Below, in pieces: positions 6,253 to 45,162 of a DNA stretch of 64,000 bases (position 1 is the first letter of the stretch; each line of letters begins with the position of its first letter). Source of the stretch: Macrostomum lignano (lineage: Eukaryota); contig NIVC01002186.1 of NCBI GenBank assembly GCA_002269645.1, positions 107,653 to 171,652 of the forward strand, given 5' to 3'. The position numbers and the translations under genes were made by a program. The notes under the pieces were generated by a model. The model was not told where the DNA came from and ran no database searches. It saw only the letters and a program-made list of their open reading frames with translations.

Positions 6253-6884
6253 TACATTGCTCATAATACTACTGCAAGTAGTTAACCGTAGCATTACAAA
6301 ACCAGTCCAGTGCAGCAAGCATTTCAAAGCTCCCGTGCCTCTTGGCGACCGTCAGTCTGGCTGAGCCTAAAATAAGTTGAAAGCGCGCAAGACAAAAAAA
6401 TGCAGAGCCATTCGTCACAGCTCCGCTCGGAATCTGCGTGTCCCCTCCCCACTTGAATTTAACTGGTTGTTGCGCGATGACGGCGTCTCCATCATCGGTC
6501 GCGGTTTGTATTCGACAAGGACACATACTTGGATTGCAGCAGAGGGCAACTGGAAGAGATAAGAGTAAAAGAACGCGATTTAACGCCAAGGATGCGCAAA
6601 CTGCACGCACTGTGCACAATTGGGAATACACTGTAGTGCCTGTGTAACATTGGAAAGTAAAAACGATAGCTGACTGGATGCAATGCCGGTTTTGCTTTCC
6701 ATCTCTTCTCTCTCCCCTTTCACGTGTGCATGTGTACGAGTCAAGCTTTTCTGTTGCACAGCTCGCCATCCTGTCTGCGTATCCTTTGTGCTGCCCGTAA
6801 TCGCAGCTGCGTGTGCCTCTCATCTTTGATTGATTTCTGTAGAATTGTAAGGGCTGGTTGCAATTCTGCACTGCTGTGCACAGC

Positions 6885-8080
6885 CCTCTGTAATGCCTGA
6901 TCACACAGTCTTCTGTAATGCCTGATCACACAGTCTTCTGTAGTGCCTGATCACACAACCCTCAGTAATGCCTGATCACACAGCCCTCAGTAATGCCTGA
7001 TCACACAGTCTTCTGTAATGCCTGATCACACAGTCTTCTGTAATGCCTGATCACACAGCCCTCAGTAATGCCTGATCACACAGCCCTCAGTAATGCCTGA
7101 TCACACAGTCTTCTGTAATGCCTGATCACACAGTCTTCTGTAATGCCTGATCACACAGCCCTCAGTAATGCCTGATCACACAGTCTTCTGTAATGCCTGA
7201 TCACACAGTCTTCTGTAGTGCCTGATCACACAGCCCTCAGTAATGCCTGATCACACAGCCCTCAGTAATGCCTGATCACACAGTCTTCTGTAATGCCTGA
7301 TCACACAGTCTTCTGTAATGCCTGATCACACAGTCTTCTGTAATGCCTGATCACACAGCCCTCAGTAATGCCTGATCACACAGTCTTCTGTAATGCCTGA
7401 TCACACAGTCTTCTGTAATGCCTGATCACACAGCCCTCAGTAATGCCTGATCACACAGCCCTCAGTAATGCCTGATCACACAGTCTTCTGTAATGCCTGA
7501 TCACACAGTCTTCTGTAATGCCTGATCACACAGTCTTCTGTAATGCCTGATCACACAGCCCTCAGTAATGCCTGATCACACAGTCTTCTGTAATGCCTGA
7601 TCACACAGTCTTCTGTAATGCCTGATCACACAACCCTCTAATGCCTGATCACACAGTCTTCTGTAATGCCTGATCACACAGTCTTCTGTAATGCCTGATC
7701 ACACAGTCTTCTGTAATGCCTGATCACACAGCCCTCAGTAATGCCTGATCACACAGTCTTCTGTAATGCCTGATCACACAGTTTTCTGTAATGCCTGATC
7801 ACACAGTCTTCTGTAATGCCTGATCACACAGTCTTCTGTAATTCCTGATCACACAGTCTTCTGTAATGCCTGATCACACAGTCTTCTGTAATGCCTGATC
7901 ACACAGTCTTCTGTAATGCCTGATCACACAGCCCTCAGTAATGCCTGATCACACAGTCTTCTGTAATGCCTGATCACACAGTTTTCTGTAATGCCTGATC
8001 ACACAGTCTTCTGTAATGCCTGATCACACAGTCTTCTGTAATTCCTGATCACACAGTCTTCTGTAATGCCTGATCACACA
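6885..8080. repeat. 25-bp minisatellite with two interleaved variants
   Basis: TAATGCCTGATCACACAGTCTTCTG and TAATGCCTGATCACACAGCCCTCAG. Confidence 0.95.
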
Positions 8081-11279: not shown

Positions 11280-36967
<25,688 letters not shown>

Positions 36968-38339: not shown

Positions 38340-38532
38340 ATTGCTAGGCAAGCTGTTGCTAAGCAAACTGTTGCTAAGCAGACTGTTGCTAAGCAGACTG
38401 TTGCTAAGCCGGTTGTTGCTAAGCCGACTGTTGCTAAGCCGATTGTTGCTAAGCCGATTGTTGCTAAGTAGACTGTTGCTATGCAGACTGTTGCTCAGTA
38501 GGCTGTTGCTATGCAAACTGTTGCTAAGCACA
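38340..38532. repeat. 15-bp repeat CTGTTGCTAAGC(A/C)GA
   Basis: Direct reading. Confidence 0.9.
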
Positions 38533-38859: not shown

Positions 38860-39312
38860 AGAGAATGAAGAGATAGATAGGGAAGACAGGGGGTGAAAAA
38901 ATGAAGAAAATGGAGGAGAGAGAGGAAGAAAGGGAAGAAGAGACACGGGAGATGGGAGAGGTAAGAGAGAAGAGAGGAAGCAGGAGAGATGAGACAGGGG
39001 AAAGTGGAGAGAGGAGAGTTGGGGGGGATGGAGAGGGGTATGGGGAGGGGGAGAGGAGATATGAGAGGGAAGCGGGAGTTAGAGGAGAAAGGGAAGAAAG
39101 GGGAGAGGAGAAATGGGAAGATGAGAGGGAAGAGAGGAGAGATGAGAGGGAAGAGAGGGGAGAGGAGAGATGAGATGGAAGAGAGGAGAGATGAGAGGGA
39201 AGAGAGGAGAGATGAGAGGGAAGAGAGGAGAGATGAGAGGGAAGAGAGGAGAGATGAGAGGGAAGAGGGGAGAGATGAGAGGGAAGAGAGGGGAGAGGAG
39301 AGATGAGAGGTG
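38860..39312. repeat. GA-rich low-complexity region with a 21-bp repeat
   Basis: GAGGAGAGATGAGAGGGAAGA units in the 3' half. Confidence 0.88.
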
Positions 39313-39669
39313 AAAGGCCAGTGAATAAAGAGAGAATCTGAATTGTGAATAGCTTTACCTAAATAAAGTGCCATCCCCAGCGATCGAAAAATGTTTTCGA
39401 TAAAGAATTTAAATGAGTAGAGAATTTTTATCAACTTTCACCAATAACCCAATTGCCCAATTTCGAATGGTTAATATCAATAATTCGTACTCAAAAATTG
39501 CTTAAATTTCATCTCTTTTTCATCAGAAACAAAAGGACTCTCCTTTGAATTCACCAAATCCACAAAAAAAGAATTTTTCTGCTCTGAAACCGTCTTACAA
39601 CCCTCGTAGTTTTATTTTATTAACGTGGGAATTTTATTTTCGGAGATTCGGTCGTTAACCACTAGGAGA

Positions 39670-42600
39670 CACACATGTCTTGAAGCCCTTTAAAGGGGAA
39701 AATAAAGTCAGCCTGAAATGACAATAATTTACACTCTCATCTGGACCTTAGCACAGCATATGTGCAATTTCAAAAAAATCTCCCGAGCTATCTCTGATTT
39801 ACAGCACTTTATTACCATATGACCTAATTACTATTAGTTTTCAATATGCGTGATGCGAAAAATGAGTGTCTACATGAGTTTGTGAAATTTGAAAAATATG
39901 ATCCTAAAACAAGTCAGAAACTTTTCATTATAATTCATAGGTATGCCATCACCTTACAAAGTCCAAAGTATAAAGTATAAATTGAAACATCAATGAATAA
40001 TTGTGACAAAATGTAACAAAAAACAGCATAAACACTCGTACAGTACAGTACAGAGAATGCTACATAAAAGTGGACAAAGAAGCAATGCGCAAAATTGTGC
40101 GTGAGTGATGCAAGGCATGGAGGGCATATTATTCTAGATATTTTTCTATCGCTTGCTTTTGAGTTGTAGCTATTATTCCCTCCTCATACGTAGCTACCAT
40201 CTCATTGGCTGTGAGCCTGTAAATTTGCTGCACAGCTCTCGTATTCATGCCATTTTGGCCCTTAGCATATCCTTCTATTAAATTCTGCTGAGTTTTCAAA
40301 GGAAGCTATTCCCTTTCCATGATGATGGGTAAGAACAAGGACTTCTGCGATATAAGTTTACCATAGAAAGAATTAAATTAAGGTTTCCACCAGCTACCTA
40401 ATGTATTCCTATCATTAATTCAATAATAAATAAAAGAAAAAATAACTTTAGGGTCCTATCGGGATAAGACAATAGCTAGCGATCATCTAGTCTTTTTTAG
40501 ATTTCATTTTCTAGTGAACTAACAATCTCTATGCATGCATTGCAAAGCTGGAATGGAATTTTGAAATGCGGACATTGTATTTCGGTGGGTTGAATGGGTA
40601 AGATAACACGCTTTTTGAAAGATTCCAATTATTTACTTCCTGTTTATGTTCTGTTTAATTTCGCTTTCCACTCTACAGGGTCTGACTAAGAACTATTTGT
40701 TCATCCCAATAAAGAAAAATGTATAATCCTAATTCGCAGTCTTGATTGATTTAGCTAGTTCACATTTTGTTTAAGCATGACGAGAGCAGTATGCAACAAC
40801 ACACTTGCGCAGTCGATCTGGATACGATGGATGATGAAAATCGATCCGAAAGTCTTGCCACATGCTGCTGAAATCGTGGTGTGCAGTCTCAACCACCTGC
40901 TCAGACCAGAAGCCAAGTCCCTTCTTAGGTTCTCCAGCTAGATTGGACATGTTCAAAAACTGGACAACGTGGTCAATAACAGCGTGGACTTTCGGGGTGA
41001 CGCGGATTCCAAGATCGATATAGGCTTGTTCGAATGCCCGGACTCGATTCTCAAAGTCTCCACACACACTCATACCAAAGCACGAGGCCTTCACATCGCG
41101 GAAGCAGCGTAGGGCGTGAGCTACAGGCATTGCCGAAAACACATTGTGCTGAGCCAGCATTCCAATCAAAATGTCGACGCCATTTAGAAGACACTCGCAG
41201 GCGTTCCCGGCAAAGTTCCCACCGTTCTGCAATGGTCGTCGAAGGCCAAGCTGCTGTAGCCAGTCATCGGTGCTTATCTGACAGTCTTCGAGTCCTCGCA
41301 GTTGAGTGTCCAGTTCTTCGAATAGTCGATTGGTCACGCCAAGCAAGAGATGCAGCCCCATTGGTGGAATGGCCTGGAGCACCATCGTGCTGTCTGGAAC
41401 TTCGAGCAGAGGAGGACGCACACAGTTTTTGAAAGCAGCAGCAGACACGTTGCGCGGCGCTTTTTCTTCTACAGTGCGCTGGTACTCAAATGCCTGTAAC
41501 CGAATACCGCCGATCGATCTCAACACGTTCGTGCGGTCTGGATTAGAAAAATCGATCCTGGCAGTCTCGCACCAAGGGCAGGGATGGGTGCTGCTGCAGC
41601 ACTGAATTCCCAGGATCGCATTCGAAATTTTCATATCAACTGCTGCACAGAATGAAAATCCTTGCAAATTAAGAAGATTCAGGATCTGCTGCAGATTATC
41701 GTAGGACTCGGAAACAGATTCGGCAATGGCAAGCAGGAGCAGTTTACGGACTCCTCCATCCTCAAAATGGAAACGGCATGCGCCTTCTGCGTACGTGCTG
41801 CGACTTCCGGTAGGTTGATCTTTTAAACCTTGAGCAGGCACAATGCTAACACAAAACTTTAAGAAGCCGCCTCCGCTGTCGATGCCAACTTTAATCAATG
41901 CGCCGTCATCTGCACTGACCTGACGACGTGCCATCACTCTGTCAATCAGAGCCAGAGGATCAGTGCAGAATACAATGCTGCGCATTTCCCTTTTTCCTTT
42001 GGCACAGTCCATCTCTAGGTTAGTCAACTCAAACAAATCATCTAGAGCAGAGTCGATGGCGCTCAGTTTGCTGCGCAAATTTGGCTCAATGCTTTTGCGT
42101 CCTTTCCATGCTCGAAAAAATTGAGCGGCCAACTTAGTTTGCCGACCGCTCAAACACAGCGTCTGCTGGAATCGGCTGAATTCCTCTGCTGGTACGGCGC
42201 AGCCACCTCTCATTGATGTAGAACTACCAGCCCGTTGCCCAACACACACTGTAAGATCACGACCTCTAGTTGCCAATTGAAATCTAGAGTTTGAGCCGGT
42301 GGAAGCAGCCTTAGCTTTAATCACGTCACTTGCGTGGATTTCGGCACCTCGACGGTCTAGCGACAACTTACTGAATAGATTTTCTCGTCGCTGTGTTTGC
42401 GTGCAGTAGTGAGGCAAACCTCTGCCAACCATTGAGTGGCAGCGCTGGCAGATGACAACAGGTTGTGCCGGTGGCAGACCATGATCTGGATCCGAACACG
42501 CGGGTCGTCCAAGCGAATGTGGCTCTGGTTTCCATGTTCCCAGTCCTTTCCCAATCGGGTTGAACCGGGCAGTCTCACATATTTTGCAAGCACAACTGCT

Positions 42601-43485
42601 GGACTGTCGCGTAATCTTTGTTGGGCTCACCTTTACGACCTCAGAGGAGTTCGGCAAAACATTCGGCGCTTTTATGCCCTTGTCGACGTCAGCCAGAAGC
42701 TTGTTGCATCGGGCACAGAGTGCTGCAGGTAGCTGCTCATCATTCGCATTGTAGTTGGGCAAAAAGTGTGCCTGAATGCGTTTCAGCGAGGCATTACCTA
42801 TTCGTTGCATTGATGAGCCCTTTTTGTAGCACAACAAGCAGATCTTGAGGCGATTTTCTTCATGTGATAGTGCATGCGTTGCATGGCTCATTTCTTTATA
42901 CATGTATGGCAAGGTGAGTAGAAATATTGAAAGTAGGCTTGAAGCTCACTATGGACTGCAAGTCAAGTCACTAACAAATACAGGTTGAGCTTGGTTTGTG
43001 AAAAGAAATCGTGCCTTGCAGAATTTATCATCAATTGATTTTATTATACAAGTAGGAAGCATACAACCAACATGCCTATAACAGTCTAGAGTCAAGTACA
43101 CTGGACAGAGCATACTCAAGCTCATGGGTCAGAGGGACCAAATTTGAGTACATTGGCAAGCCACACAACCCAAACCCCCGCTGAGCTACATGAAACTTTA
43201 TATTTATGTGTTGCATCATCTAAGTTGGTTTACTATAATTGAAATCGGCTATCACTGGTTTAACTTACATGTACCTTGATCTACGGTTCTACCCATATGT
43301 ACAATCAATGCAAATTATGCATTATCACAAGCTATGGAATGAAGTACTTGTAGAATGGAGATAGCTCGGTAGATTTTTTTAAAATTGCACGTATACCTTG
43401 CTACTAAGGTTCAGGTGAATGCATAAATCACTGTCATTTGAGGCTGACTTTATTTTCACCTTGAGAAGGCTTCAGGACATGTGTG
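39670..43485 (-). mobile_element. Complete 3816-bp DNA transposon of the Chapaev/Transib/RAG-related group
   Basis: Imperfect TIRs 39670-39794 and 43358-43485, both starting CACACATGTC (6 mismatches in the first 54 bp); exact 5-bp direct repeat GGAGA at 39665-39669 and 43486-43490; encloses the transposase ORF. Confidence 0.92.
40771..42903 (-). CDS. DDE transposase (~710 aa) with an N-terminal Chapa/RAG1-N-terminus-like zinc finger
   Basis: Numbered on the 713-aa track ORF; first ATG at 42903. HEENRLKICLLC (H-x7-C-x2-C)...DEQLPAALCARC...CACKICETAR; D345 in KVGIDSGGGFLK; D426 in AVDMK followed by HPCPWC; LHLLLG; GNFAGNAC; TPKVHAVIDH; E675 in WSEQVVETAH. No stops or frameshifts. Confidence 0.9.
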   Translation of the reverse strand: MYKEMSHATHALSHEENRLKICLLCYKKGSSMQRIGNASLKRIQAHFLPNYNANDEQLPAALCARCNKLLADVDKGIKAPNVLPNSSEVVKVSPTKITRQSSSCACKICETARFNPIGKGLGTWKPEPHSLGRPACSDPDHGLPPAQPVVICQRCHSMVGRGLPHYCTQTQRRENLFSKLSLDRRGAEIHASDVIKAKAASTGSNSRFQLATRGRDLTVCVGQRAGSSTSMRGGCAVPAEEFSRFQQTLCLSGRQTKLAAQFFRAWKGRKSIEPNLRSKLSAIDSALDDLFELTNLEMDCAKGKREMRSIVFCTDPLALIDRVMARRQVSADDGALIKVGIDSGGGFLKFCVSIVPAQGLKDQPTGSRSTYAEGACRFHFEDGGVRKLLLLAIAESVSESYDNLQQILNLLNLQGFSFCAAVDMKISNAILGIQCCSSTHPCPWCETARIDFSNPDRTNVLRSIGGIRLQAFEYQRTVEEKAPRNVSAAAFKNCVRPPLLEVPDSTMVLQAIPPMGLHLLLGVTNRLFEELDTQLRGLEDCQISTDDWLQQLGLRRPLQNGGNFAGNACECLLNGVDILIGMLAQHNVFSAMPVAHALRCFRDVKASCFGMSVCGDFENRVRAFEQAYIDLGIRVTPKVHAVIDHVVQFLNMSNLAGEPKKGLGFWSEQVVETAHHDFSSMWQDFRIDFHHPSYPDRLRKCVVAYCSRHA

Positions 43486-44039
43486 GGAGAATGTTGCTTT
43501 ACAGTACATATGCACATAGCATGCCTGTGGGGCATTGCAAGCTCTAGCAATAATATAGCTATAGGTTAATTTGTGTGCTTCTTTTGCTTGGACCAAAAAT
43601 GCAATAAGTCTTCTGTGAGTCATTTTGAGACTCTGCTCAAGCTCTATACGAGTAAGCAATGGTGGGGTCGTGTATCGTATGGGGTTTTTAAGTTTCCAAC
43701 TGTATTTCTGGTCCGCAACTAGTGGCTCTGGATACAATCGATATTATAAAACTGCGCTTCATTGCTTTCAAAGCATGCGAAAATTGGTCAATTCCGCCGA
43801 CGCCAAATTGAGTATACGGAAAAAGGGAGTTTGATCGTTAATATCTCTCTGTTGAGACAGAATTAGTATTGAGTTTTGTTCCATTCTCTGGCGACTTTGA
43901 TCACTAAAACAGGTGAGACAGCTCATTTTTGTACGATTCGGCAACGGTTCAATCTTAAAGCTAAGAAGCGTGACTCTATGTTTCATATTCATTGCGAGCA
44001 CTATGAGAAATCAAGCCAATAGGACAAAAGTCCAATACG

Positions 44040-45162
44040 TGACAGTCGCAACAATTGAGTCCTTATCAGTGACAATCCTTAAGAGTGACAGTCTTCCTCA
44101 ATGACAGTCCCTATCAGTGACATTCCTCATTAGTGACAGTCCTCATCAGTGACAGTATTCATCAGCCACAGTCCTTATCAGTGCCAGTCCTTATCAGTGA
44201 CAGTCCTTATCAGTGACAGTCCTTATCAGTGACATTCCTCATCAATGACAGTCCCTATCAGTGACATTCCTCATTAGTGACAGTCCTTATCAGTGACAGT
44301 CTTCATCAGTGACAGTCCTTATCAGTGACAGTCCTTATCAGTGACAGTCCTTTCAGTGACAGTTTTCTTCAGTGACAGTCTTCATCAGTGACAGTCTTCT
44401 TGAGTGACAGTCCTTATCAGTGACAGTCCTTATCAGTGACAGTCCTTATCAGTGACAGTCATTATCAGTGACAGTTTTTTATCTATGACAGTCCTTATCA
44501 ATGACAGCCATTATCAGTGTCCGAATCAGTGACCAACGAAATAATCCACGAGATAAACATCCAAACAGCACAGTGCAGAAATTGTGTGCACCTTCCGCCC
44601 ACTCGGCTCCCAGCAGGTCATGTCGGAGGTCACTCTTCGCTCTCAGGTGTTCGCCTCGTTGGAGGAGCCGCCGCCGCCCTACCGGCCGTTGCTGTCCCGC
44701 AGTCGCACTGTCGCCACAGCCAACGCTGAGTCGCAACAGCAGCAGCAACAGCAGCAGCAGCAGCTACCTCCGACAGAACAGCCGCAGCAGAATCTGCCAC
44801 AGCAGCCGCCGCCACCGCCCGCATCTGCAACGACGCCTCCGGCTGCGAATCCAGACGAGACTGCGCCGCCATTTCGCCGCTACAGATTCCAGCGGAAACA
44901 GTTCCCCGGCAGGCAGCGTTGAGAACTGGAAGGACTTTATAGGATAGCGCAATGTACTTAAATTCTTAATGATTATAGTCCTTATCAGTGACAGTCCTTA
45001 TCAGTGACAGTCCTTATCAGTGACAGTCCTTATCAGTGACAATCCTTATCAGTGACAGTCCTTATCAGTGACAGTCCTTATCAGTGACAGTCCTTATCAG
45101 TGACAGTCCTTATCAGTGACAGTCCTTATCAGTGACAGTCCTTATCAATGACAGTCCCTACC
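44040..45162. repeat. 16-bp minisatellite split by a GC-rich exon-like island (44520-44975)
   Basis: Unit CAGTCCTTATCAGTGA on both sides of the island. Confidence 0.92.
44617..44922 (+). CDS. Orphan terminal-exon-like segment, Q/P-rich with a PPPPY motif; parent gene unassigned
   Basis: Acceptor-like CCCAGCAG|GTC (or CTCTCAG|GTG); reads VMSEVTLRSQVFASLEEPPPPYRPLLSRSR..QQQQ..PPFRRYRFQRKQFPGRQR*; GC-rich within AT-rich DNA. Confidence 0.45.
   Translation, partial: VMSEVTLRSQVFASLEEPPPPYRPLLSRSRTVATANAESQQQQQQQQQQLPPTEQPQQNLPQQPPPPPASATTPPAANPDETAPPFRRYRFQRKQFPGRQR

What the first reader, a model, noticed from the sequence alone, without database searches (positions are those of the whole stretch)
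39665..43490. Intact RAG1-like transposon: Chapaev-type transposase with a Transib/RAG-type 5-bp TSD
Seen: a full element with CAC...GTG ends, ~125-bp TIRs, an exact 5-bp TSD (GGAGA; the 4-bp flanks GAGA and GGAG do not match) and one uninterrupted ORF. Its N-terminus (H-x7-C-x2-C...D-x3-LP-x3-C-x2-C...CKICETAR) echoes the RAG1 non-core zinc domain (remembered human RAG1 ...HPTEFCHNC...SCDICNTAR). The core has D345, D426, E675, a CxxC after the second Asp and an H-x4-H before the Glu. Known: Chapaev transposases carry this Chapa finger but were described with 4-bp TSDs (3-bp for Chapaev3), whereas 5-bp TSDs with CAC ends characterise Transib and RAG/ProtoRAG. Inference: the core motifs look Chapaev-like (IDSGGG, LHLLLG) while the TSD is RAG/Transib-like, so this may be an intermediate, possibly active RAG1-related lineage without a RAG2 partner.
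Basis: partly seen in the sequence, partly recalled or inferred. Interest (0 to 1): 0.88.

Follow-up and report, generated by a model that had tools for sequence, protein, structure and literature searches.

The report
Active Chapaev transposon making 5-bp duplications
This is an intact, recently mobile Chapaev-type cut-and-paste transposon in a flatworm genome, with a RAG1-like transposase fold; it mostly duplicates 5 bp of target DNA where its closest relatives in the same genome duplicate 4 bp, which makes it a variant of a known kind and not a missing link to RAG.

Summary
Window 39670-43485 is a 3816-bp element with CACACATGTC...GACATGTGTG ends and imperfect TIRs of about 135-150 bp. It is flanked by GGAGA/GGAGA and carries one 710-aa ORF.

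The genome (764 Mb, very probably Macrostomum lignano) holds seven independent insertions with readable flanks. Five have 5-bp TSDs, and four of those are proven by empty sites with a single copy of the 5-mer. Two read as 4 bp.

The protein is a Chapaev transposase:
- Its N-terminus aligns to labelled Chapa domains (Chapaev-1_HM, E 9e-10).
- Its core aligns to a labelled Chapaev3 transposase (hhalign 97.5%).
- It has D342, D423 and E668 with C(2)C, LH and H(4)H motifs.
- Its predicted fold matches only RAG1/RAG1L in the PDB (E about 1e-12).

Two sister families in the same genome (50% and about 33-36% identity) show 4-bp TSDs, and family A is nested among them in a tree. The 5-bp TSD is therefore most simply a recent, derived shift inside Chapaev, not an intermediate state towards Transib/RAG.

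Copies 99.4-99.9% identical, pN/pS of 0.10-0.25 and empty sites with identical flanks point to recent activity. Verdict: new variant of a known kind, moderate interest.

The parts
39665..39669 (.). left copy of the target-site duplication, GGAGA
   Evidence: identical 5-mer at 43486-43490; the same flanks are seen in two duplicate contigs
39670..43485 (-). whole autonomous element (3816 bp); the transposase is encoded on the minus strand
   Evidence: full-length copies at six other independent loci at 98.5-98.7% identity
39670..39803 (.). left terminal inverted repeat, starting CACACATGTCTTGAAGCCC
   Evidence: arms 39670-39751 and 39749-39803 pair with 43404-43485 and 43349-43403 at 82-83%
40771..42903 (-). 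transposase ORF, 710 aa, single exon (P0001)
   Evidence: intact in 6 contigs, one shared TGA in 3; pN/pS 0.10-0.25 between sublineages
42559..42864 (-). residues 14-115: Chapa / RAG1-NZD-like zinc finger (H14, C22, C25, C63, C66, C104, C106, C109)
   Evidence: Chapaev-1_HM 32% identity, E 9e-10; Chapaev-2_HM 2e-8; Chapaev-1_AA 9e-7; sub-threshold zf-AD hits; best fold matches are ZAD domains, not significant
40864..42192 (-). residues 238-680: DDE core with RAG1-like fold (D342, D423, C442/C445, L517-H518, H640/H645, E668)
   Evidence: hhalign to Chapaev3 Garfield_BM, prob 97.5%, E 6.8e-12; Foldseek: the 43 best PDB hits are all RAG1/BbRAG1L
43349..43485 (.). right terminal inverted repeat, ending GGCTTCAGGACATGTGTG
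43486..43490 (.). right copy of the target-site duplication, GGAGA

Best explanation
The element is an autonomous, recently active DNA transposon of the Chapaev group (CMC/'CMCT' assemblage), in a genome that is very probably Macrostomum lignano.

Its single-exon gene encodes a 710-aa transposase with two parts: an N-terminal Chapa (RAG1 NZD-like) zinc finger, and a DDE core with the RAG1/Transib architecture, including a C(2)C...H(4)H zinc site between the second Asp and the Glu.

By inference from RAG1/Transib, a transposase dimer binds the roughly 140-bp TIRs and cleaves at the CAC/GTG termini. It then joins the two 3' ends to target DNA with a stagger that is usually 5 nt, and gap repair produces the 5-bp TSD.

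The closest sampled families in the same genome use a 4-nt stagger. The 5-bp TSD is therefore a derived, family-level shift within Chapaev and is still leaky (two of seven events read as 4 bp). It is not a trait inherited from a Transib/RAG-like ancestor.

Shown: element anatomy, TSD lengths, empty sites, family placement, fold similarity and purifying selection. Inferred: the chemistry, and that the transposase itself sets the stagger.
For: Anatomy.

Independent insertions and TSDs, with empty sites:
- TGTTG, TATTA, TGTCT and TACCC each occur once in the empty site and twice around the element.
- The window locus has GGAGA twice but no empty site.
- TTAA and TGAC read as 4 bp.

Sister families: family B (50% identity) has TGTC. 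Family F (about 33-36% identity) has CTCT and CTCG.

Tree: (famB,(famA,P0002)) has 100/100 support, famF lies in the neighbouring clade (100/99), and labelled Chapaev3 is the most distant, long branch on a midpoint-drawn tree.

Chapaev identity:
- N-terminus against labelled Chapa domains from PMC4411706 Additional file 5.
- Core against labelled Chapaev3 Garfield_BM from the PMC4079192 supplement: BLASTP 5e-5 and hhalign 97.5%.
- C(2)C, LH and H(4)H motifs.

RAG1-like fold: AF2 model with pLDDT 72, and 75-95 over most of the core. Foldseek ranks 1-43 are all RAG1 or BbRAG1L, with E from 2.6e-12 to 2.8e-8; the next hit is Hermes at 7.5e-3.

Recent activity:
- Sublineages are 99.4-99.9% identical internally.
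- pN/pS is 0.10-0.25.
- The empty site for the C1247 copy has flanks 100% identical over 800 bp.
Against: - Only three insertion events (one in family B, two in family F) define the 4-bp state of the relatives.
- The TSD of the closest relative, P0002 (66% identity, from another sample), is unknown.
- Two of seven family-A events are 4 bp, so '5 bp' is a preference and not a rule. Alternatively, these two junctions lost a base after insertion, as is seen at one duplicate of the window locus.
- Repbase and Dfam could not be consulted, so a Chapaev family with 5-bp TSDs may already be on record there.
- No canonical Chapaev core sequence was available. Only N-terminal domains and a Chapaev3 core were compared.
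- The cleavage and joining chemistry is not tested.
Confidence: 0.8

Rival explanations
1. One reading: the element belongs to an intermediate lineage between Chapaev and Transib/RAG that has kept a Transib/RAG-type 5-bp TSD from a common ancestor.
For: 5-bp TSDs at five loci. CAC termini. RAG1-like fold. The only sensible PDB sequence hits of the family profile, though not significant, are BbRAG1L and HzTransib, aligned on the D-x19-C-x2-C and H-x4-H...SE motifs.
Against: The family is nested with full support beside a 4-bp family of the same genome, and another 4-bp family lies outside both. Sequence similarity to RAG1L/Transib is not significant (E 0.14 and 0.56), and there is no Pfam RAG1 hit. 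Similarity to labelled Chapaev domains is significant. A RAG1-like fold and the C(2)C/H(4)H motifs are shared by the whole CMC-Transib assemblage (PMC12730594), so they do not mark an intermediate.
Confidence: 0.05
2. The transposase really makes 4-bp TSDs like other Chapaevs, and the fifth matching base is an accident of target preference or of assembly.
For: Two events read as 4 bp (TTAA, TGAC). One duplicate contig of the window locus reads GAGA on the right because one G of a G-run is missing. Differences between the duplicate contigs are mostly indels (8 gap columns against 1 substitution), as expected of long-read consensus errors.
Against: At four loci the empty site holds the 5-mer once and the filled site holds it on both sides, so the fifth base is duplicated and not merely preferred. 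Five of five matches of a fifth base have a chance of about 1/1024. Indel errors would shorten or lengthen apparent TSDs at random; they would not create exact 5-bp repeats.
Confidence: 0.03
3. The 4-bp and 5-bp events are made by different transposases acting in trans. For example, family-A ends may sometimes be mobilised by a 4-bp sister-family enzyme, so family A's own enzyme is strictly 5 bp.
For: Non-autonomous copies with a stop at codon 172 have clearly been mobilised in trans. Several intact sister families coexist in the genome. Both 4-bp events lie in one sublineage (C1247 and C987 copies).
Against: The TIR ends of families B (CACAGCGCGC) and F (CACGGTTGGG) share only CAC with family A (CACACATGTC), so cross-mobilisation seems unlikely. 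The same sublineage also has a 5-bp event (C168 copy).
Confidence: 0.1

Closest known systems
Chapaev transposons of the Chapaev-1/2/5_HM (Hydra) and Chapaev-1_AA (Aedes) type, as labelled in Kapitonov & Koonin 2015 (PMC4411706, Additional file 5)
   Same: The N-terminal Chapa zinc finger aligns over residues 14-115: HEENR-x-K[IV]C-x-LC ... P-x2-[IL]C-x-RC ... C-x-C-x-IC-[EQ]-TAR. Identity to Chapaev-1_HM is 32%, E 9e-10. There is no RING finger after it. The termini are CAC...GTG, and the transposase is a single DDE protein of about 700 aa.
   Different: The TSD is mostly 5 bp, against the '3- to 4-bp' given as the Chapaev hallmark (PMC4079192) and the 2-4 bp given for CMC (bioRxiv 10.64898/2026.08.26.747230). 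The core sequences of these reference families were not available for comparison.
Chapaev3 (e.g. Garfield_BM of Bombyx mori, PMC4079192)
   Same: Homologous DDE core with C(2)C, LH and H(4)H motifs: hhalign probability 97.5%, E 6.8e-12 over 337 columns. CAC termini.
   Different: Only about 20% identity. Chapaev3 has a different N-terminal finger type, a 3-bp TWA TSD and shorter elements (about 1.8-2.6 kb). In the tree it is the most distant, long branch.
Transib (e.g. HzTransib, PDB 6PQN)
   Same: 5-bp TSD, CAC termini, and a DDE core with the C(2)C/H(4)H zinc site.
   Different: No significant sequence similarity (profile E 0.56). Canonical Transib lacks the Chapa/NZD domain (PMC4411706; bioRxiv 10.64898/2026.01.24.700457), whereas this protein has it. 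No HzTransib chain appeared among the 50 best Foldseek hits.
RAG1 / RAG1L (ProtoRAG, PDB 6B40; mouse RAG1 4WWX, 6CG0)
   Same: The predicted fold matches RAG1 cores over 570-700 alignment columns (E down to 2.6e-12, target-normalised TM 0.47-0.59). The D-x19-C-x2-C and H-x4-H...SE motif geometry is shared. Both have an NZD-like N-terminal finger and a 5-bp TSD.
   Different: 12-15% identity in the structural alignment. No RAG2-like gene in the element. No RING finger. The two TIRs are about equally long; a 12/23-type asymmetry was not examined.

Membership tests
Chapaev (CMC assemblage) | 5'-CAC ... GTG-3' termini (PMC4079192) | tested here: met
   CACACATGTC...GACATGTGTG in the window and in six other full copies
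Chapaev (CMC assemblage) | TSD 'generally 3 to 4 bp' (4 bp for Chapaev proper, TWA for Chapaev3) | tested here: not met
   Five of seven independent insertions have 5-bp TSDs, four of them proven by empty sites. Two read as 4 bp. Sister families B and F do meet it. For this reason the element is filed as a variant and not a plain member.
Chapaev (CMC assemblage) | [quoted passage not shown] | tested here: met
   D342, D423, C442-x2-C445, L517-H518, H640-x4-H645, E668. Of these, D423, C442 and C445 stay invariant across all 13 homologues; D342 and H640 are kept in at least 90%; L517, H518, H645 and E668 are invariant among the first 9
Chapaev (CMC assemblage) | N-terminal Chapa zinc-finger domain | tested here: met
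   BLASTP of residues 1-200 against labelled Chapa domains copied from PMC4411706 Additional file 5: Chapaev-1_HM E 9e-10, Chapaev-2_HM 2e-8, Chapaev-1_AA 9e-7. The reference strings come from a machine-read PDF and may hold errors.
Chapaev (CMC assemblage) | Transposase core homologous to a labelled Chapaev transposase | tested here: met
   Against Chapaev3 Garfield_BM: BLASTP 5e-5, hhalign 97.5%, E 6.8e-12. A canonical Chapaev1/2 core was not available.
Transib | 5-bp TSD | tested here: met
   Five of seven events. A 2026 preprint shows that TSD length also varies inside Transib.
Transib | Transposase significantly similar in sequence to the Transib/RAG1 core | tested here: not met
   Family profile against the PDB: HzTransib E 0.56, BbRAG1L E 0.14. 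Single sequence: no hit. No Pfam RAG1 hit.
Transib | No Chapa/NZD domain at the N-terminus (PMC4411706; bioRxiv 10.64898/2026.01.24.700457) | tested here: not met
   This protein has a Chapa domain
RAG-like (ProtoRAG/RAGL) transposons | RAG2-like gene carried in the element next to RAG1L | tested here: not met
   The transposase is the only long ORF. The 1.1-kb 3' part has no stop-to-stop frame above 82 aa.
RAG-like (ProtoRAG/RAGL) transposons | RAG1-like core fold | tested here: met
   Foldseek ranks 1-43 are all RAG1/BbRAG1L. This feature is shared with the whole CMC-Transib assemblage and does not discriminate.
RAG-like (ProtoRAG/RAGL) transposons | Hairpin formation on the flanking DNA during excision | not testable with these tools
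   The only hint is a possible excision footprint (TGGAC at a site whose filled allele has TGAC+TGAC)

The most novel reading that the evidence does not exclude
The stagger of target joining has shifted from 4 to 5 nt within a young clade of RAG1-fold transposases. Families A (mostly 5 bp) and B (4 bp; one event read) are 50% identical, both have intact ORFs, and both sit in the genome of a transgenesis-ready laboratory flatworm. They would form a natural matched pair for finding what sets TSD length in RAG1/Transib/Chapaev enzymes. Family A may also be the first Chapaev element that could be shown to be active experimentally.
Probability: 0.45. Interest if true: 0.55.

Novelty: new variant of a known kind. 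Interest (0 to 1): 0.4.

Why it matters
[quoted passage not shown] An apparently active family in a laboratory animal gives a concrete candidate for biochemical work.

The TSD result also bears on classification. TSD length (5 bp for Transib, 2-4 bp for CMC) is used to tell these groups apart. This family shows the character can change between families that are 50% identical, matching a recent report of TSD variation inside Transib. Non-autonomous CAC...GTG elements with 5-bp TSDs therefore cannot safely be called Transib.

It does not change the picture of RAG origins.

Tried and rejected
- Pfam scans of the protein and ten relatives: no family above threshold, only recurrent sub-threshold zf-AD hits at the N-terminus.
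- phmmer of the whole protein and of residues 1-200 against PDB sequences: nothing. The RAG1 NZD structure cited by the preprint did not turn up in any of these searches.
- The look-up of encoding contigs for the M. lignano homologue P0003: not on record.
Only L068-L071 were obtained.
- Reading TSDs of relatives from marine metagenome contigs (P0014, P0007): rejected. The one contig with both ends has no TSD, and the same flank appears attached to either end in different contigs, so the assemblies are ambiguous across the TIRs.
- The listing of cluster members for ten relatives: almost no names or organisms.
- Yuan & Wessler 2011 and Bao et al. 2009 are not held in the library, so their statements are cited second-hand.
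- The rearranged copy on C1797 (L026) was set aside as uninformative for TSD length.
Full report
**1. What is at the coordinates**

The sequence shows GGAGA at 39665-39669, then an element starting CACACATGTCTTGAAGCCC at 39670 and ending ...GGCTTCAGGACATGTGTG at 43485, then GGAGA again at 43486-43490. Neither a 4-bp reading (GAGA/GGAG) nor a 6-bp reading matches. The termini pair as an imperfect inverted repeat, with adjacent arms of 82 nt (83%) and 55 nt (82%), or about 150 nt at 81.5% by BLAST.

One ORF of 710 aa lies on the minus strand at 40771..42903. The remaining 1.1 kb on its 3' side and 0.58 kb on its 5' side hold no frame longer than 82 aa, so there is no second gene.

The candidates are D342, D423, C442-x2-C445, L517-H518, H640-x4-H645 and E668.

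**2. The genome and the copies**

The window belongs to a 764.4-Mb assembly of 5269 contigs. The best named homologue is a Macrostomum lignano protein. That protein is 98.4% identical to an ORF of a sister family fetched from this same genome. The genome is therefore M. lignano or something very close to it, a free-living flatworm.

A search with the left TIR found 23 matches. After fetching them they resolve as follows:
- The window locus is present three times with the same flanks (C2186, C927 at 100%, C3948 at 99.8%), so these are duplicates of one insertion.
- Six other full-length independent insertions sit on C1247, C987, C168, C997, C2109 and C1009.
- One copy is internally deleted and rearranged (C1797).
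- One copy is truncated (C2115).
- An older subfamily at about 90% identity lacks its right end.
- There is one short remnant.

**3. TSD length**

Read directly from the filled sites:

| Contig | TSD | Length |
|---|---|---|
| window | GGAGA | 5 bp |
| C168 | TGTTG | 5 bp |
| C997 | TATTA | 5 bp |
| C2109 | TGTCT | 5 bp |
| C1009 | TACCC | 5 bp |
| C1247 | TTAA | 4 bp |
| C987 | TGAC | 4 bp |

I joined the two flanks of each insertion into one query and searched the genome with it. Every locus except the window's has one or two matching contigs without the element.

At the four 5-bp loci other than the window, the empty site carries the 5-mer exactly once. This proves that five bases are duplicated. 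The empty site for the C1247 copy has flanks 100% identical over 800 bp and a single TTAA, so that event is a 4-bp duplication as it stands.

The C987 copy has TGAC on both sides, while both of its empty sites read TGGAC in flanks that otherwise differ at 1 of about 800 positions. This is either a polymorphism that happens to sit in the target or an excision footprint.

One caution applies. In the duplicate C3948 the right junction of the window locus has lost one G of a G-run and would read as a 4-bp TSD. Junctions can therefore lose a base, whether in the genome or in the assembly. The family thus makes 5-bp TSDs in five of seven readable events, and 4 bp, really or apparently, in two.

**4. 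What the protein is**

Pfam gives nothing above threshold. The only recurrent signal is a sub-threshold zf-AD (ZAD) hit at the N-terminus in six of eleven family members, best E 5.6e-5. The family is nevertheless very large: a profile of nine homologues found 6456 clusters at E<=1e-3 among 1.84 billion representatives.

Labelled reference sequences came from supplements of two papers:
- The Chapa-domain alignment of Kapitonov & Koonin 2015 let me compare residues 1-200 with named Chapaev, Chapaev3, RAG1 and RAG1L N-termini. Results were Chapaev-1_HM 32% identity over 104 columns (E 9e-10), Chapaev-2_HM 2e-8 and Chapaev-1_AA 9e-7. RAG1L and human RAG1 reached only 0.04-0.5.
- The Chapaev3 transposase Garfield_BM aligns to the core at BLASTP E 5e-5 and hhalign probability 97.5%, E 6.8e-12 over 337 columns. 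All motifs are in register.

Against PDB sequences, the family profile gives only four hits below E 10. Two are BbRAG1L (0.14) and HzTransib (0.56), aligned on the D...C-x2-C and H-x4-H...SE blocks. That is sensible but not significant.

The AlphaFold2 model has mean pLDDT 72, and 75-95 over most of residues 240-710. Its Foldseek ranks 1-43 are all RAG1 or BbRAG1L, with E from 2.6e-12 to 2.8e-8 and target-normalised TM of 0.47-0.59. The next hit is Hermes at 7.5e-3.

A separate model of residues 1-140 (pLDDT 65) has ZAD domains as its best matches, led by Pita 7POK, but these are not significant. This agrees with a 2026 preprint that relates the first zinc module of the RAG1 NZD and of the Chapa domain to ZAD.

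The protein is therefore a Chapaev transposase. The RAG1-like fold and N-terminal finger are properties of that group already described in the literature.

**5. Is the 5-bp TSD ancestral or derived?**

A six-frame search of the genome with the protein shows at least six further related families, most with intact ORFs of 694-786 aa, at 50%, 48%, 47%, 48%, 36% and 32% identity.
- Family B (50%): one complete copy with CACAGCGCGC...GCGCGCTGTG ends, flanked by TGTC/TGTC.
- Family F (36% by the genome search, 33% by tblastn): two copies with CACGGTTGGG ends, flanked by CTCT/CTCT and CTCG/CTCG.

A 5-bp reading fails in all three.

In a maximum-likelihood tree of 48 proteins, the window's family groups with P0002 (66% identity, another sample), and then with family B, both at 100/100. 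Family F lies in the neighbouring clade (100/99). Labelled Chapaev3 Garfield_BM is the most distant, long branch; the tree is drawn rooted at the midpoint.

With 4 bp in the sister and in the outgroup, and 3-4 bp reported for Chapaev in general, the simplest reading is that 5 bp arose on the branch to family A. The sample of relatives is small, and this is the weakest link in the argument.

**6. Activity**

The full copies fall into three sublineages:
- the window copy;
- C1247/C987/C168, 99.4-99.8% identical, ORF intact;
- C997/C2109/C1009, 99.7-99.9% identical, sharing a stop at codon 172.

Between sublineages identity is 98.5-98.7%. pN/pS between sublineages is 0.10-0.25, so the transposase has been under purifying selection while the family diversified. 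The stop-bearing copies sit at three different loci with perfect 5-bp TSDs, and two of them have identical ORFs, so they were moved in trans very recently. Presence/absence differences between near-identical contigs point the same way.

**7. Comparison with what is known**

- PMC4079192 gives '3- to 4-bp' TSDs and CAC/GTG termini as the Chapaev hallmarks.
- PMC12730594 gives 2-5 bp for the whole CMC+Transib assemblage, and shared C(2)C and H(3-4)H motifs.
- A 2026 preprint states that Transib is told apart from CMC partly by its 5-bp TSD against 2-4 bp, and then shows 3-bp and TA TSDs inside Transib.
- Full-text searches found no paper linking Chapaev with 5-bp TSDs, and none describing Chapaev elements of M. 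lignano. Repbase Reports and Dfam are not in that library.

I therefore rate the element as a new variant of a known kind. By its transposase it is a member of the Chapaev clade, but it departs from the group's TSD hallmark.

**8. Mechanism, and what is inferred**

Shown:
- the TIRs, the CAC termini and the duplicated target bases;
- a DDE candidate triad in a RAG1-like predicted fold;
- selection on the ORF;
- mobilisation of defective copies in trans.

Inferred from RAG1/Transib structures and biochemistry:
- a dimer pairs the two ends;
- the 3'-OH ends attack the two target strands 5 nt apart (sometimes 4 nt);
- repair fills the gaps.

Whether excision passes through flank hairpins, as in RAG/Transib, is not known for any Chapaev. 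The TGGAC site is at most a hint.

Noticed in passing
L039 (G000:C3996) and L040 (G000:C1900), empty sites of the C987 copy (L028): The filled allele has TGAC on both sides of the element. Both empty contigs read TGGAC at that spot, although the 800 bp of flanks differ at only one other position. This could be an excision footprint (8 bp reduced to 5 bp) or a polymorphism that happens to lie in the target.
   Followed up: partly
window 43480-43490 vs L024 (G000:C3948): The window locus is present three times in the assembly with the same flanks (C2186, C927, C3948). In C3948 one G of the run GTGTGGGAGA is missing, so the same insertion would read there as a 4-bp TSD. Differences between these duplicates are mostly indels (8 gap columns against 1 substitution).
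   Followed up: partly
L030, L032, L033 (G000:C997, C2109, C1009): Three copies share a premature stop at codon 172 of the transposase. They sit at different loci with perfect 5-bp TSDs and are 99.7-99.9% identical, so a defective sublineage is being mobilised in trans.
   Followed up: yes
L026 (G000:C1797:147381-150660): This internally deleted copy (about 530 bp missing) has both ends 2 bp shorter (CACATG...CATGTG) and is flanked by TATAG/TAAAG. Relative to the empty sites its left flank lacks about 22 bp. It may reflect use of the inner CAC of the CACACA terminus, or a later rearrangement.
   Followed up: partly
G000, places listed: At least six further Chapaev-like families (32-50% identity to the window's transposase) are present, most with several intact ORFs of 694-786 aa. 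This genome carries an unusually rich and apparently live Chapaev population.
   Followed up: partly
target sites of the seven insertions: Six of seven TSDs begin with T, and five of seven are preceded by C in the target (C|T...). This may be a weak, asymmetric target preference, but the sample is too small to judge.
   Followed up: no
P0052 (UniRef100_A0A1I8I628, 2033 aa): A protein annotated as an Arf-GAP/ANK/PH protein matches the transposase profile in three stretches (best stretch residues 704-976 of the protein). It is probably a gene model that runs through a Chapaev insertion; a fusion gene is less likely.
   Followed up: no
L074-L081 (ENA marine metagenome contigs, some from Tara Oceans): A relative of about 3.9 kb (transposase P0007, 38% identity) has CACAGTTGTCCTGAAGG termini, which share TGTCYTGAAG with the window element's end. 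Its contigs attach the same flank to either end, so no TSD can be read.
   Followed up: partly
L068 (G000:C2031:34600-41800): This family-B copy has lost about 100 bp of its left end. It lies between long outer inverted repeats (1-275 vs 6783-7057 at 98%, and others), as if nested in another inverted-repeat element or a palindromic region.
   Followed up: no
window 36000-36758, 38341-38530, 39051-39309, 44058-44519, 44977-45157 and much of 11-32 kb: The window is dense in mini- and microsatellite arrays (units of 29, 15, 21 and 16 bp, among others). Most of the long 'ORFs' elsewhere in the window are translations of such repeats.
   Followed up: no
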